Under the pieces are notes generated by a model. It was not told where the DNA came from, ran no database searches, and saw nothing but the letters and a program-made list of their open reading frames with translations. Source: Selaginella moellendorffii (Eukaryota; Plantae; Lycopodiophyta). Taken from it: a DNA stretch of 64,000 nucleotides. Position 1 is the stretch's first letter; the number at the start of each line of letters is the position of its first letter. Location: the NCBI RefSeq assembly GCF_000143415.4, contig NW_003314275.1, positions 1,183,955 through 1,247,954 of the forward strand, given 5' to 3'. Below, in pieces: positions 2,980 to 8,570 of this stretch. The position numbers and the translations under genes are program-made.

Positions 2980-4387
<1,408 letters not shown>

Positions 4388-4587
4388 GGCGCTGCTTGGA
4401 TCGCAATCGCAAAGGGATTGTGAGCTCTCATAGTCGAGGAGCCCACGACTCTGTGATTGGACGCTCCAGATTTGCCCACGAGGCAGAGCCCTATATTTCA
4501 AAATAGAGTCAAATCATCTTTTCTAGAAGGCCGTGTAAAAAGTATTTCGAGGTTTAGGGTTTGTATCCTCGATCGATCGATCGCGCC

Positions 4588-6063
4588 ATGGCGCTGGACG
4601 TAGCACAGGTGGTGCTCACGGCATTCGACACGAGCATGTCGCGGACATGGCGAGAGGAGGATCGGCGCTGGCGGTCCGAGGACAGAGTGTGGAGGGCCGA
4701 GGATCTCGAGTACCGGGCCGAGGAGCGCAAGTGTAGGAATCAAGAGCGGGCTATGCGCGAGGCCGAGCAGAGGTGAGAAATCCTGGAGCTGTGTCTGGAG
4801 AGATTTTTTCATGTTTTTTGATGTGCTTGGATGAAAGAGTGCCGCAGATGGAGAGATGAGGATATGGAGCAGCGGCATGTGGAGAATGCGCGCTACCTGT
4901 GGACGAGGTGAGTGAAATCCTCTCATTCATTTTGTATTGTTGTAGTGTGGAGTCTTCCTTTGATCGAGTTTTCTTTCCTTGCTCTCGGTTTTAATTCTTC
5001 TCTTGCCTTATAGGTTCGTGGAGAAAAATCGTAGGGACGTGGAAGAAAAGTCCGAGCAGCTTAAAGCGATCTCCAATCTGGCAGCCTTGTTTGCTGGTTT
5101 TGCTGTAGTAACTCTAACACAATTCACCATAGCTCCAGATCCAGTTTTAACTGTAAGTGTTTTTCTCTCTCGCGCTCTAGATATGAAGTTCTTGCTTCCG
5201 TGTTTCAACAGGTTTGGATCGCGTTTTATGGTGTACTGACTGCGATCGCTGTGAGTTTTTCATTTCACATCACTCGTACTTTATAGCTTTAACTTTGATG
5301 GTCTCGTTTAGGTTGGTCTCATGACGATATCCATGGTGACTTGTACTTTGATCTTGGGGAGCATACTAAAGAACGGCAAATCATACGTGAATGAAGAGGC
5401 CGAAGAGGAGTTCATGTTCAAGTGCCGTGACTTTGTGAAGTCTTACAGGACTGGAGACAAGCCACCGTCTCCTCGAAGAACTTTCGAAGCGTTTTGGGAG
5501 ATCAGGTTGGTTTTTCTCTCTTCTTCGTTTCCAGCATTTTTTAATTTTTTTTGTTTTGTTTCGTCATCTGTTTTCTTTTGCAATTTGCAGGTGTGAAGAT
5601 GACTGGAAGAGAGCTTTCCAGTTCTTTGCATGGGGTAGGCCGTTAAACTCCAGTTAGTGTTTTGTGACGTTTTCTCTTTTAACAGGGGTGCTGTCCTTCC
5701 TTTTCAGTTTGATCCCGATTGGGTGGGTGTATTTACCTTTTTTTTCTTCTGATACGATCGCCCTCCTCGCAGGTGGATAAAGTTTTATAACTCACGGCTC
5801 ACAGCGGGACTCTTCATGGGAGTGATTGCAGTATCAATCATAGTCTGGTGAGTAAAAAAGAAAGGAAATGGTACCTGATAAAACAATACTGGACTCGTTT
5901 CAGGGGCTTTGTACAATACTTATGGGGGGGATATCTCACCAAGACGTTTAGATACAACCGGACGAGCATAGCGGAAAGTGGGAGCAGCCATGCGGCCAGC
6001 ATCTCGGCTGGACTGCCATTCGATTGGCATATTGCTCCGGGGAGTGTAGATAGGCAAGTCTGA
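4588..6063 (+). CDS. ORAI: Orai/CRAC-channel-like four-TM protein (multi-exon)
   Basis: TM1 LKAISNLAALFAGFAVVTLTQF aligns without gaps to Orai1 [22 protein letters not shown]. Spliced TM3 GVLSFLFSLIPIGWIKF matches GTLLFLAEVVLLCWVKF. Four hydrophobic segments and short GT-AG introns. Confidence 0.85.
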
Positions 6064-6664
6064 CAAGAGGAAAAGAAAAGAACAATGACGTAGATCCGCA
6101 AAATAGAGTTCCCTGTCCAAGCCTTCCACTCGAGAACGAATCTTGTCATCATCCAGGGAGCTTGAATCTTCTCTTTCGTGCTTGAAAGCTCACTGGTTTC
6201 TATGTTCACTTTGTAGCTGGAAGGGAAAGTCGACTCGTAACAAAACCAACGAATAATTGAGTGTTACTGCATCCACGAGGTGCCACTTTTTCCCTTGCAT
6301 TCCTGTGCCTCTTCGCTGATAATTATTGTCCTTTGGCTGCAGGAAGGAAAAAAGAAATGGAAAGAATATTTGTGAATCAAATTGAAGCCCACTGGTCTGA
6401 CTTGAGATTTCCCATTCGAAACGTGCAGCCAGCCTTTGCAATCATTTCTGAGCGCCGCACTGGAGTAGTCGCAACCGACCACACAAATGGGGCTGAAACA
6501 ACGTACCCGATTTCCAGGGAGTGATATCCTTAATGCGTGCTGTAGAGAAAAATGATACGATCATCTCTGCGTATTATCCGCCATGAGTTTGCTCGATATA
6601 AACCGGAGGCGCTGCCTTCTCTTTTGCTCGTCACAAGAGAACATCACACTTCGAGTCCAGAGCT

Positions 6665-8570
6665 ATGTCTTCTGTGAATCCCAACTTTGCTTCCCAAGGA
6701 TGGAAGTCCGCGCCTTTTATCTTCGGTATGAACTTCTGTTTTCTCTGCTCCTACTGATGGTAGTTTCTGGTTTTTCTTCTTTCAGCTGCTATTGGACTGG
6801 AAAACATGGCCTTCCTTTCGGTCGGGATAAACTTGTTTCCATACATGTTTACCACGATGCACTTCTCCATTACCGATGCGGCCAACGCGGTTACCAATTT
6901 CATGGGAACTTCTTTTCTTCTCACTCTGCTGGGAGGATTTCTGTCTGACGTCTGCTTGAGCAAGTTCTGGACAATCAGCACTGGAGCAGCGATAGCATCT
7001 GTGGTAAGCAGGAGAGTTCTCTTTCTTTTACTTGTTGTTCTTATCTTTTATGTTTGACTGGACAGGGATTTACATTCTTGACACTTTCGTCTTCGATTCC
7101 CGCGCTGCGGCCGCCTCCATGTCCGTTACTCAGTCCAGAATGCCAGGAAGCGAGTGCCACCGGAAAGCTGGTTCTTTTCCTAGGACTCTACCTCGTTGCG
7201 ATCGGGAGTGGAGCTGTCAAGAGCAATCTAGCAGCACTCGGCGCGGATCAATTCGACAGCACGGCCAACTCGAAAGAGAAAAGAGAGATATCGACTTACT
7301 TCAACTGTGCTTTCGTGGCTTTTTGCTTGGGAGCCATCGTTGCTGTCACCGCGCTCGTCTACGTCCAGGACAACGTCTCTCGCCAATGCGGCTACGCCAT
7401 AGCTCTCGGCGCAGTGCTGCTGGCGACCATTTTCTTCGTTTCCGGTCGCAAGTTCTACCGAAGAACATCCCTGGGAAAGAATCCACTGCTCAGTGTTGCC
7501 CGAGTTTTCGTAGCGGCTCTATACAACTGGAGGGTGGCAGTGCCTTTGGATAGCAACGAGACGATTCAGGATGAAGAAGCTGGAGACAAAGTAGACAATT
7601 ATATTCAACGCACTCCACAGTTCAAGTAAGTGTTTTCAAACGATCAAGTATTGGCGAATAGAACTGACCAGCTTTTTTGTCTGTTTCCAGATTCTTGGAC
7701 AGAGCAGCAGTCCACACGAAAGCCATGACAAACGACACAATCCCGTGGAACCTCTGCACAGTGACACAAGTCGAGGAAGCCAAGATCGTGCTGAGGATTA
7801 TACCCGTTTTCGCGAGCACCATCATGATGAACTGCGTGCTGGGCCAGCTCCAGACATTCTCCCTGGCCCAAGGCAAGACCATGGATCGAAAAGTCACGCA
7901 CAAGTTCGAGATCCCGCCGGCATCGCTGCCGTTTTTCCCGCTGGCGATCATGGTGGTTTTGGTTCCGATCTACGACAGGCTCATCGTCCCGGTGATCCGG
8001 CGAGCAACAGGGCACGAGCACGGCATCACGCACCTCCAGAGAATCGGGATTGGACTTCTGCTCGCGGTTTCCTCCATGGCCATCGCAGCTCTGGTGGAGG
8101 AGAAGAGGATCCGCGTAGCAACAGCGAGCAGGCTTCTGGATCGTCCAGCCGAGATTATTCCCATGAGCATCTGCTGGCTTGGACTGCAGTACGTGACGTT
8201 TGGCATCGCGGACATGTTCACGTTCGTGGGCCTCCAGGAATTCTTCTACAGTGAATCTCCGGCCGGGCTCAAGAGCATGGCGACTTCGCTGGCGTACGTT
8301 TCCATCGCCATTGGCTACTTCATGAGCTCCTTGCTCGTCTCCATCGTGAACGCATGCACACGTAGGAAAGGTGGCGAAGGTTGGCTGCCAGACAATCTTA
8401 ACAGGAGCAGGCTTCGCGATTTTTACTGGCTCTTGGCGTGTCTTAGCACCGCCAACTTGATCAACTACGTCTTTTGGGCGTTGTGGTATCGGAGGGGAGA
8501 ACTTGCGGACAGGGAGCTGCGGAACAAGGAGAATCAGGATTTGGAAGTTATGAGCTCCGAGAATCAATAA
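6665..8570 (+). CDS. NRT1/PTR family (NPF, NPF4-like) transporter, 4 exons
   Basis: GWKSAPFIF, AANAVTNFMGTSFLLTLLGGFLSD, ALGADQFD, CTVTQVEEAK, LQRIGIGL, GLQEFFYSESP, FYWLLA. Confidence 0.93.

What the first reader, a model, noticed from the sequence alone, without database searches (positions are those of the whole stretch)
5060..5790. Plant Orai with Gln at the E106 selectivity filter, Ser at E190 and Asn at R91
Seen: gap-free TM1 alignment puts CAA (Gln, 5120-5122) at Orai1 E106 and Asn at R91. Spliced TM3 puts Ser at E190. The gene otherwise looks intact. Known: E106 forms the Ca2+-selective ring, E106Q is a non-conducting dominant-negative mutant in animal Orai1, and plants lack a recognised STIM. 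Inference: this is not a classical CRAC channel and may have different selectivity, a regulatory-subunit role or a novel gating partner.
Basis: partly seen in the sequence, partly recalled or inferred. Interest (0 to 1): 0.75.

Follow-up and report, generated by a model that had tools for sequence, protein, structure and literature searches.

The report
Spikemoss Orai channel with glutamine pore
This intact spikemoss (Selaginella) gene encodes an Orai-type channel subunit in which the pore glutamate that animal Orai channels need to select calcium is a glutamine, conserved from stoneworts and desmids to Ginkgo, so these plant "Orai calcium channels" probably do not work like the animal ones.

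Summary
Observation confirmed. Window 4588-6063 (+) holds an intact nine-exon gene, Selaginella moellendorffii LOC9653726 (310 aa). It is an Orai-family protein: Pfam Orai-1 scores 160 bits, and the AlphaFold model superposes on Drosophila Orai (Z 14.8, rmsd 2.7 A).

Sequence, profile and structural alignments agree on three positions. Gln118 (CAA 5120-5122) sits at Orai1 E106 / dOrai E178, Asn103 at R91 and Ser228 at E190. The next acidic residue after Gln118 is Asp124 of APDP. Its position is not conserved among orthologues, and one orthologue has no acidic loop residue.

The Gln is old. All 37 proteins of a streptophyte clade carry it, from Chara and Closterium to lycophytes and Ginkgo, in two paralogous subclades. 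Residues 83-118 are 36/36 identical between Selaginella and Closterium. Separate Gln-type groups exist in green algae. Selaginella also has a Glu-bearing paralogue (LOC9650622, Trp at R91).

Best reading: a conserved, working pore without the CRAC calcium filter, so probably a STIM-independent channel of different selectivity. Conduction, selectivity and gating are inferred. The main rival is a subunit of heteromers with the Glu paralogue.

I found no paper that notes the Gln. The scan had already flagged the same feature on another piece of this genome (s1-402902).

The parts
4588..6063 (+). Whole coding region of Selaginella moellendorffii LOC9653726 (Orai-family, 310 aa), nine exons
   Evidence: The exon model from the sequence has GT..AG introns throughout. 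It is identical to public protein P0001. Pfam Orai-1 scores 160.3 bits, E 4.8e-47, covering 2-172 of 173 profile positions.
4588..4772 (+). Exon 1 (residues 1-61 plus 2 nt): start of the N-terminal heptad W-R-x-E-D helix
   Evidence: Trp or another aromatic residue recurs every 7 residues at W21, W28, W35 and Y42, with C49 being Trp in orthologues. Periodicity power peaks at 3.5 and 7. AlphaFold2 models one helix over residues 2-118.
4848..4907 (+). Exon 2 (residues 62-82): conserved WRxEDMEQRHxENARYLW segment
   Evidence: W63, Q70, N75, R77, W80 and R82 are at least 90% conserved in 88 homologues.
5014..5152 (+). Exon 3 (residues 83-128): pre-TM1 helix, pore helix TM1 and start of the outer loop
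   Evidence: Pfam Orai-1 scores 46.8 bits on this exon alone. Residues 83-118 are 36/36 identical to Closterium.
5120..5122 (+). CAA = Gln118, at the position of the Orai1 E106 / dOrai E178 selectivity-filter Glu
   Evidence: Gln is present in 37/37 proteins of the streptophyte clade.
5075..5077 (+). AAT = Asn103, at the position of Orai1 R91 / dOrai K163
   Evidence: Asn is the majority state in green Orai of both Glu and Gln types.
5063..5065 (+). AAA = Lys99, the one retained basic pore ring (Orai1 K87)
   Evidence: This position is Lys or Arg in all groups.
5087..5110 (+). Conserved hydrophobic gate and hinge: L107, G110, F111, V114 (= Orai1 L95, G98, F99, V102)
   Evidence: All four are invariant in clade A (18/18).
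5138..5140 (+). GAT = Asp124 of APDP in the TM1-TM2 loop; not a conserved substitute filter
   Evidence: In the loops of clade A the acidic residue lies at varying positions. The Diphasiastrum orthologue has none. The loop is only 11-33% identical among orthologues.
5212..5250 (+). Exon 4 (residues 129-141): first part of TM2
5312..5505 (+). Exon 5 (residues 142-205 plus 2 nt): rest of TM2 and the conserved cytosolic TM2-TM3 loop (ILKNGKSYVNEEAEEEF ... PPxPRRTFEAFW)
   Evidence: Pfam Orai-1 scores 36.6 bits on this exon alone. Conservation is shown.
5591..5634 (+). Exon 6 (residues 206-221): RCExDW motif and start of TM3
5686..5722 (+). Exon 7 (residues 221-233): TM3 core
5706..5708 (+). AGT = Ser228, at the position of Orai1 E190 / dOrai E262
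   Evidence: Ser occurs in 35/36 proteins of clades A and B, Asn in chlorophytes and Leu in clade C.
5773..5847 (+). Exon 8 (residues 233-258): end of TM3 (WIKF) and first part of TM4
5904..6063 (+). Exon 9 (residues 258-310 and stop): rest of TM4 and the C-terminal tail
6010..6030 (+). GLPFDWH motif (residues 294-300), conserved from chlorophytes to lycophytes
   Evidence: Alignment, consensus. It forms an island of high pLDDT (block 291-300 = 89, neighbouring blocks 60-64) with a short helix at 297-300.

Best explanation
The window carries the intact nine-exon Selaginella moellendorffii gene LOC9653726. It belongs to an ancient streptophyte subfamily of Orai-fold channel subunits. The protein keeps the Orai four-helix fold and the pore helix TM1. 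TM1 retains the hydrophobic gate and hinge (L107, G110, F111, V114) and one basic ring (K99). Several charged positions of animal Orai are neutral here. The glutamate that forms the Ca2+-selective ring in animal Orai is glutamine (Q118). The R91 and R83 equivalents are Asn and Ser, and TM3 E190 is Ser. I infer that the protein assembles as Orai does into a pore that cannot bind Ca2+ tightly at its mouth, so it is not a CRAC-type Ca2+-selective channel. Most likely it is a conducting cation channel of low Ca2+ selectivity; a Gln ring is compatible with cation and even Ca2+ flux, as in unedited Q-form AMPA receptors (established knowledge). I further infer that it is opened not by STIM but through cytosolic parts specific to the green lineage. 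These are a long N-terminal heptad W-R-x-E-D helix continuous with TM1, the conserved TM2-TM3 loop, and the C-terminal GLPFDWH motif. Shown here: the gene, family, fold, residue mapping and deep conservation. Inferred: oligomeric state, conduction, selectivity and gating.
For: Gene and identity: the nine exon translations match P0001 = LOC9653726 exactly. Family and fold: Pfam Orai-1 scores 160 bits. The profile of 88 homologues hits PDB Orai chains at E 3.9e-13. The AlphaFold2 model has pLDDT 90.1. The ten best Foldseek hits are all Drosophila Orai. VIA-align gives Z 14.8, rmsd 2.7 A over 125 of 127 residues of 7kr5_A. Residue mapping is supported. Functional constraint: Gln is present in 37/37 proteins of the streptophyte clade. 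Residues 83-118 are 36/36 identical to Closterium, whereas the outer loop is 11-33% identical, so the pore helix is the most constrained part. L107, G110, F111, V114, T115, T117 and Q118 are invariant in clade A. Gln-type proteins seem to work without a Glu-type partner. In three word-index searches, every Orai retrieved from Chlorella, Micractinium, Coccomyxa (including two neighbouring genes), Apatococcus, Symbiochloris, Tetradesmus, Monoraphidium, Chromochloris, Closterium and Chara was Gln-type. The Glu/Gln state changed at least 3-5 times on the tree and was then kept. No STIM-type gating: PDB alignments stop at the end of TM4, and the tail instead carries the green-lineage motif GLPFDWH. 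Reviews state that plants and green algae lack STIM (PMC11894410, PMC8318260, PMC11085791).
Against: In human Orai1 the same change, E106Q, gives a pore-dead dominant-negative subunit (PMC3050638). A Gln ring could therefore mean no conduction at all. No electrophysiology, localisation or knock-out of any plant or algal Orai was found. The hexamer was not modelled. Expression of this Selaginella gene was not tested here; the only indications are the RefSeq model and transcript-derived orthologues. The absence of Glu-type partners in Gln-only lineages rests on capped word-index searches, not on whole-genome scans. Cation versus anion preference cannot be read from the sequence: the inferred pore lining has K99 (+), E92 (-) and R88 (+).
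Confidence: 0.5

Rival explanations
1. Modulatory subunit of heteromers. The Gln-type protein co-assembles with the Glu-type paralogue (LOC9650622, clade C). It dilutes the Glu ring and so tunes or suppresses Ca2+ selectivity or conductance, much as E106Q subunits poison animal Orai channels.
For: Selaginella, Diphasiastrum, Sphagnum, Ginkgo and a gene with an 'SM...' identifier (probably Spirogloea) have both Gln-type and Glu-type genes. The three clades are all older than land plants. Animal Orai1-3 heteromerise (PMC7229178), and E106Q acts as a dominant negative (PMC3050638).
Against: Many lineages yielded Gln-type proteins only: trebouxiophytes, Sphaeropleales, Closterium, Chara, and the mosses Ceratodon and Physcomitrium. 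TM1 of clade C is only 15% identical to that of this protein, and it has Trp, Ser and Thr at pore positions, so a mixed pore would be very irregular. Chromochloris has a natural tandem of two Orai domains with Gln in both halves.
Confidence: 0.2
2. Non-conducting Orai-fold protein. It would be a scaffold or regulator that has lost channel function, as proposed for the animal Orai relative Jiraiya/TMEM221.
For: E106Q is pore-dead in Orai1 (PMC3050638). Jiraiya lacks the Ca2+-binding residues (PMC7016017). Some green Orai proteins carry precomputed Pfam Jiraiya (PF15038) hits beside Orai-1.
Against: The pore-lining residues of TM1 are the most conserved part of the protein. These include the hydrophobic gate, the G98-equivalent hinge and the K87-equivalent ring, and the segment is 36/36 identical to Closterium. 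A protein that no longer needs a pore would not be expected to keep them this way.
Confidence: 0.12
3. Alignment artefact. Another acidic residue, such as Asp124 of APDP, actually forms the filter, and the channel is an ordinary Ca2+-selective Orai.
For: P0001 has one Asp six residues after the Gln. Seventeen of 18 clade A loops hold at least one acidic residue. Animal Orai1 has loop aspartates (D110/112/114) that help attract Ca2+ (PMC2151669).
Against: TM1 aligns without gaps by sequence, profile and structure. The acidic loop residue moves between positions +4, +6 and +7. It is absent in the Diphasiastrum orthologue and in several clade B proteins, including the Selaginella paralogue. In Orai1 the loop aspartates modulate selectivity but do not replace E106 (PMC2151669).
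Confidence: 0.04
4. Decaying gene or mis-annotation. On this reading the Gln is a recent disabling change.
For: None, beyond the analogy with E106Q.
Against: The reading frame is intact over nine exons with canonical splice sites. The model is identical to the RefSeq model. Gln is invariant in 37/37 relatives, with transcript-derived orthologues aligning without gaps across exon junctions.
Confidence: 0.01

Closest known systems
Animal Orai / CRAC channel pore subunit (human Orai1; Drosophila Orai, PDB 4HKR, 6BBF, 7KR5)
   Same: Same Pfam family (PF07856) and the same four-helix fold (Z 14.8, rmsd 2.7 A). TM1 is the pore helix, with L95, G98, F99, V102 and K87 equivalents conserved. The WxKF motif at the end of TM3 is present.
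   Different: E106 is Gln, R91 is Asn, R83 is Ser and E190 is Ser. Nothing aligns with the C-terminal STIM-binding helix. About 80 extra N-terminal residues form a heptad W-R-x-E-D helix. The TM2-TM3 loop is long and conserved, and there is a GLPFDWH tail. No STIM is known in plants (literature).
Engineered human Orai1 E106Q (pore-dead dominant negative)
   Same: The same residue change at the same pore position.
   Different: E106Q is an artificial loss-of-function mutant. Here Gln is the wild-type state, invariant in a clade that spans streptophyte algae to Ginkgo. It is flanked by clade-specific Thr115 and Thr117 and sits in a pore with a reduced basic region.
Glu-type green-lineage Orai (Bryopsis, Ostreobium, Cymbomonas, Mesostigma, Edaphochlamys)
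   Same: The same green-lineage architecture: N-terminal WRxED helix, NRRDVEEKSEQLK pre-TM1 segment, TM2-TM3 loop and GLPFDWH tail. Asn is at R91 and a non-acidic residue at E190.
   Different: They keep Glu at the filter position.
Selaginella paralogue LOC9650622 and its clade C (Diphasiastrum, Sphagnum, Picea, Ginkgo)
   Same: Same genome, same overall architecture, 45% identity.
   Different: It keeps the filter Glu but has Trp at R91 (the position of the human R91W and dOrai K163W loss-of-function changes). It also has Ser at G98, Thr at V102 and Leu at E190. TM1 is only 15% identical.
Selaginella paralogue LOC9644061 and its clade B (mosses, Diphasiastrum, Ginkgo, Closterium)
   Same: Also Gln at E106, Asn at R91 and Ser at E190, with the same VTLTQF motif. 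It is the sister subclade of the same Gln clade.
   Different: 53% identity, with different TM2-TM4 and loop sequences.
Jiraiya / TMEM221 (animal Orai-derived membrane protein)
   Same: An Orai relative that lacks the Ca2+-binding residues (PMC7016017).
   Different: Jiraiya is animal-specific and has diverged throughout. This protein scores as bona fide Orai-1 and keeps the pore-lining gate residues.

Membership tests
Orai family (Pfam PF07856, Orai-1) | Significant match to the family profile over its full length | tested here: met
   160.3 bits against a cut-off of 25, E 4.8e-47, profile positions 2-172 of 173. Exons 3 and 5 alone score 46.8 and 36.6 bits.
Orai family (Pfam PF07856, Orai-1) | Four-transmembrane-helix Orai fold with a long TM1 pore helix | tested here: met
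   AlphaFold2 pLDDT 90.1 with helices 2-118, 128-166, 199-236 and 241-283. The ten best Foldseek hits are all dOrai. VIA-align gives Z 14.8, rmsd 2.7 A, 125/127 residues to 7kr5_A.
Orai family (Pfam PF07856, Orai-1) | Pore-lining hydrophobic gate and hinge (Orai1 L95, G98, F99, V102) | tested here: met
   L107, G110, F111 and V114 are invariant in clade A and nearly so across green Orai.
Orai family (Pfam PF07856, Orai-1) | Hexameric assembly around a central TM1 pore | not testable with these tools
   Only monomer prediction is available. Assembly is inferred by homology.
CRAC channel (Ca2+-selective, STIM-gated Orai channel) | Glutamate ring at the outer end of TM1 (Orai1 E106 / dOrai E178) | tested here: not met
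   Gln118 occupies the position. There is no Asp or Glu from V113 to P123. Gln is present in 37/37 clade members.
CRAC channel (Ca2+-selective, STIM-gated Orai channel) | Basic inner pore (Orai1 R91, K87, R83) | tested here: not met
   Only K99 (= K87) is kept. R91 is Asn103 and R83 is Ser95.
CRAC channel (Ca2+-selective, STIM-gated Orai channel) | TM3 glutamate (Orai1 E190), which influences selectivity and pore size | tested here: not met
   Ser228 occupies the position.
CRAC channel (Ca2+-selective, STIM-gated Orai channel) | C-terminal M4-extension helix that binds STIM | tested here: inconclusive
   Profile and structural alignments end near the end of TM4. The tail 284-310 is mostly non-helical, with low pLDDT except at the GLPFDWH motif.
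CRAC channel (Ca2+-selective, STIM-gated Orai channel) | A STIM partner encoded in the same genome | not tested
   I did not search the Selaginella genome. Reviews state that STIM is absent from plants and green algae (PMC11894410, PMC8318260, PMC11085791).

The most novel reading that the evidence does not exclude
Gln-type Orai proteins are a distinct, self-contained class of channels whose selectivity is not Ca2+-specific. They might be monovalent or non-selective cation channels, hydrated-divalent channels such as Mg2+ (by analogy with the Asn ring of CorA), or even anion channels. The six long N-terminal Trp-heptad helices would form a cytosolic coiled-coil stalk continuous with the pore and act as a built-in gate or sensor in place of STIM. 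If so, the 'ORAI Ca2+ channel' entry in plant and algal calcium toolkits would be wrong for most streptophytes and many green algae.
Probability: 0.2. Interest if true: 0.85.

Novelty: new variant of a known kind. Interest (0 to 1): 0.66.

Why it matters
Reviews of plant calcium signalling list ORAI as a Ca2+ channel kept up to gymnosperms, and they ask how it is gated without STIM. This gene and its clade show that most streptophyte Orai proteins, and those of many green algae, lack the one residue that makes animal Orai Ca2+-selective. The rest of the pore helix is nevertheless almost frozen over the time since land plants and desmids diverged. That turns a vague question (does store-operated Ca2+ entry exist in plants?) into concrete experiments. 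What does a natural Gln-ring Orai conduct? Does a Gln-to-Glu swap confer Ca2+ selectivity? Do the Gln-type and Glu/Trp-type paralogues co-assemble? For CRAC-channel biophysics it offers a natural, evolutionarily tuned counterpart of the pore-dead E106Q mutant.

Tried and rejected
1. Single exons against PDB sequences by phmmer found no Orai chain. The full-length protein and the profile did find Orai.
I corrected them with a script.
3. A tblastn search of the exon translations against the window found no second Orai copy in these 64 kb.
4. The look-up of encoding contigs has no record for P0001, so I obtained no transcript contig for the Selaginella gene itself.
5. The search of earlier findings by place (near) and by sequence returned nothing.
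6. The ESM Atlas gave no usable hit for the N-terminal 82 residues. Pfam also finds nothing there apart from sub-threshold low-complexity matches.
7. I guessed that the upstream minus-strand ORF 3581-4075 was an oxidoreductase fragment. Pfam gave no hit, so I dropped the idea.
8. The idea that Orai retention tracks motile sperm fails, because Closterium and Picea have Orai genes.
9. I looked for co-variation between the Gln and the V102 position. Streptophyte Gln-types keep Val, while chlorophyte Gln-types are mixed, so there is no consistent pattern.
10. I could not retrieve a Chlamydomonas reinhardtii Orai sequence. Its relative Edaphochlamys is Glu-type.
11. Collins and Meyer 2011 (PMC3175768) is not held in the paper library. 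I did not look up Edel et al. 2017 or Cai 2007 by id; the full-text searches did not return them. An earlier mention of the Gln in any of these three cannot be excluded.
12. I did not submit a self-joined spliced model to any tool. That step was left out, and the public protein P0001 was used by its id instead.
Full report
THE GENE

Reading 4500-6600 on the plus strand and locating splice sites with a script gives a nine-exon model. The exons are 4588-4772, 4848-4907, 5014-5152, 5212-5250, 5312-5505, 5591-5634, 5686-5722, 5773-5847 and 5904-6063. All eight introns are 50-106 nt long and begin GT and end AG. The coding sequence is 933 nt, or 310 codons plus a stop.

Pfam Orai-1 (PF07856) hits exon 3 at 46.8 bits and exon 5 at 36.6 bits, both above the 25-bit cut-off. 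A phmmer search of 1.84 billion representatives with exon 3 alone returned a 310-residue protein, P0001, as best hit. All nine exon translations lie in P0001 at exactly the predicted offsets.

I never submitted a self-joined spliced sequence; that step was left out. From here on I used the public protein P0001 by its id. P0001 is 'uncharacterized protein LOC9653726 isoform X1 [Selaginella moellendorffii]', so the window is from the spikemoss genome. The full protein scores 160.3 bits (E 4.8e-47) on Orai-1 over profile positions 2-172 of 173.

THE OBSERVATION

Four routes support their equivalence to Orai1 E106, R91 and E190.

- phmmer of P0001 against Drosophila Orai (4HKR) aligns LKAISNLAALFAGFAVVTLTQF with [22 protein letters not shown] without a gap. 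In TM3 it aligns FSLIPIGWIKFY with LEIAILCWVKFY.
- A profile of 88 homologues (alignment A1) finds the Orai chains of the PDB at E 3.9e-13. It gives the same gap-free TM1 alignment at top posterior probability.
- An AlphaFold2 model built on A1 has mean pLDDT 90.1. Its TM1 helix ends at residue 118, just as the filter Glu caps M1 in Orai.
- The ten best Foldseek hits are all Drosophila Orai chains. VIA-align gives Z 14.8, rmsd 2.7 A over 125 of 127 residues of 7kr5_A. The aligned ranges start at model 96 = chain 156, 88 = 148 and 84 = 144. This constant offset of 60 puts Q118 on E178 and N103 on K163.

PMC11085791 names E178 as the Ca2+-selectivity glutamate of Drosophila Orai. The PDB titles name K163W as the loss-of-function change. 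The conclusion does not depend on the register: there is no Asp or Glu between V113 and P123.

It does not hold up. In the 18 clade A orthologues the single acidic loop residue sits at +4, +6 or +7 from the Gln. The Diphasiastrum orthologue has none, nor do several clade B proteins, including the Selaginella paralogue. This loop is also the least conserved segment of the protein, 11-33% identical among orthologues.

HOW WIDESPREAD THE GLN IS

Among the 150 best representatives found with exon 3, the filter column holds Gln in 98, Glu in 52 and Asn in 1. The R91 column holds Asn in 100.

A word-index search with P0001 gave named relatives. I built a maximum-likelihood tree of 99 near-full-length proteins with the filter column left out. 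It shows a streptophyte clade of 37 proteins that all carry Gln. The clade has three parts.

- Subclade A holds this gene. Its members come from Closterium, two genes with 'SM...' identifiers (probably Spirogloea, judged by identifier format from my own knowledge), Sphagnum, Diphasiastrum and Selaginella.
- Subclade B holds the Selaginella paralogue LOC9644061. Its members come from Closterium, the mosses Sphagnum, Ceratodon and Physcomitrium, Diphasiastrum and Ginkgo.
- Chara braunii is the remaining member.

The sister group, clade C, holds the third Selaginella paralogue, LOC9650622. Its other members come from Diphasiastrum, Sphagnum and Picea. A second search added Ginkgo Gb_35851 and an 'SM...' gene. 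Clade C keeps Glu but has Trp at R91, Ser at G98, Thr at V102 and Leu at E190.

The Glu/Gln state needs at least five changes on the tree, of which well-supported branches force at least three. A third search showed that every Orai retrieved from the following taxa is Gln-type: the trebouxiophytes Chlorella, Micractinium, Coccomyxa, Apatococcus and Symbiochloris, and the Sphaeropleales Tetradesmus, Monoraphidium and Chromochloris. Ulvophytes, prasinophytes, Mesostigma and the volvocalean Edaphochlamys are Glu-type. The algal Gln-types use a different local motif (FLQFD) from the streptophyte ones (VTLTQF), which fits independent origins.

Asn at R91 and a non-acidic residue at E190 are common to Glu- and Gln-type green Orai. 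These two features are therefore not special to this gene.

CONSTRAINT

Residues 83-118 (pre-TM1 plus TM1) are 36/36 identical between Selaginella and Closterium. TM2 and TM3 are 64-76% identical, TM4 is 28% and the outer loop 22%. In clade A, L107, G110, F111, V114, T115, T117 and Q118 are invariant. The pore helix is thus the most strongly conserved part of the protein. That is what one expects of a working pore, and not of a decaying or purely structural one.

ARCHITECTURE OUTSIDE THE PORE

All green-lineage Orai proteins share parts that animal Orai lacks.

- An N-terminal region of about 80 residues has Trp or another aromatic residue every seventh position (W21, W28, W35, Y42, C49 with Trp in orthologues, M56, W63), flanked by Arg, Glu and Asp. 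Hydrophobic periodicity peaks sharply at 3.5 and 7 residues. AlphaFold2 models residues 2-118 as one helix at pLDDT 92-98.
- The pre-TM1 segment NRRDVEEKSEQLK is nearly invariant.
- The TM2-TM3 loop is long and conserved.
- The C-terminal GLPFDWH motif forms a high-confidence island in an otherwise poorly predicted tail.

By homology with dOrai (offset 60), the inner pore would be lined by N103, K99, S95, E92 and R88. That gives one basic ring where animals have three, plus an acidic ring. Nothing aligns with the STIM-binding M4 extension.

MECHANISM

Shown here: the family, the fold, the residue mapping, the age and invariance of the Gln, and the presence of a Glu paralogue.

Inferred: the protein forms an Orai-like oligomeric pore that lacks the high-affinity Ca2+ site, so it is not a CRAC-type channel.

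I consider a conducting channel of altered selectivity, with STIM-independent gating through the green-lineage cytosolic modules, the most likely reading (about 0.5). There are three reasons. The pore lining is under the strongest constraint. Gln-type proteins appear to be the only Orai in many lineages. A Gln ring is compatible with cation and Ca2+ flux in other channels, such as Q-form AMPA receptors (established knowledge).

The main argument against is that E106Q in human Orai1 is pore-dead and dominant-negative (PMC3050638).

The rivals are as follows.
- A modulatory subunit of heteromers with clade C (0.2). The co-occurrence of both types in Selaginella, Diphasiastrum, Sphagnum and Ginkgo supports this. 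The Gln-only lineages and the 15% TM1 identity weaken it.
- A non-conducting Orai-fold protein like Jiraiya (0.12).
- An alignment artefact (0.04).
- A decaying gene (0.01).

KNOWN OR NEW

That Orai genes exist in Physcomitrella, Selaginella and up to gymnosperms, without STIM, is published (PMC7016017, PMC11894410, PMC8318260, PMC11085791). None of the papers I could search mentions the Gln. PMC11085791 speaks of 'the conserved glutamate', and PMC8318260 relays that the Chlamydomonas Orai preserves many important sequence features. I found no functional study of any plant or algal Orai. Collins and Meyer 2011 is not held in the library. I did not look up Edel et al. 2017 or Cai 2007 by id, and the full-text searches did not return them, so priority cannot be excluded.

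Within this scan the same feature was already reported on another piece of the same genome (s1-402902), and the Trp-type paralogue was reported in s1-394677. I re-derived both claims independently here. I rate the finding a new variant of a known kind: a bona fide Orai-family member that fails the defining pore feature of CRAC channels.

Noticed in passing
window 4588-4907 (exons 1-2; residues 1-82): N-terminal domain specific to the green lineage, with a strict heptad of Trp or aromatic residues inside W-R-x-E-D repeats. It is predicted as one helix continuous with the pore helix (residues 2-118). It could form a long cytosolic coiled-coil stalk in the oligomer. No Pfam or Atlas match was found.
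   Followed up: partly
window 6010-6030 (residues 294-300): C-terminal motif GLPFDWH, conserved from chlorophytes (Bryopsis, Tetradesmus) to lycophytes. It forms a high-pLDDT island in a disordered tail, which suggests that it docks somewhere on the protein or on a partner.
   Followed up: partly
P0002 (Chromochloris zofingiensis Cz07g20190) and P0018: Natural tandem proteins with two Orai domains in one chain (433 and 532 aa), with Gln at the filter position of both halves. They are natural concatemers, which would fit a hexamer built from three dimers.
   Followed up: no
P0220 (Selaginella LOC9650622) and clade C (P0217, P0214, P0245, P0265, P0266): A paralogue clade that keeps the filter Glu but carries Trp at the R91/K163 position (the human R91W and dOrai K163W loss-of-function site). 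It also has Ser at G98 and Thr at V102, conserved from an 'SM...' alga to Picea and Ginkgo.
   Followed up: partly
P0178, P0179, P0002, P0251: Some green-lineage or metagenomic Orai proteins carry a precomputed Pfam Jiraiya (PF15038) hit beside Orai-1. This is in line with the proposed common origin of Orai and Jiraiya/TMEM221.
   Followed up: no
window about 6583-7629 and beyond, + strand: The next gene downstream is a POT/PTR2 (NPF-type) transporter. ORF 7054-7626 hits Pfam PTR2 at E 4e-32.
   Followed up: partly
window about 3848-3897: A (GA)n dinucleotide microsatellite of about 25 units lies upstream of the Orai gene.
   Followed up: no
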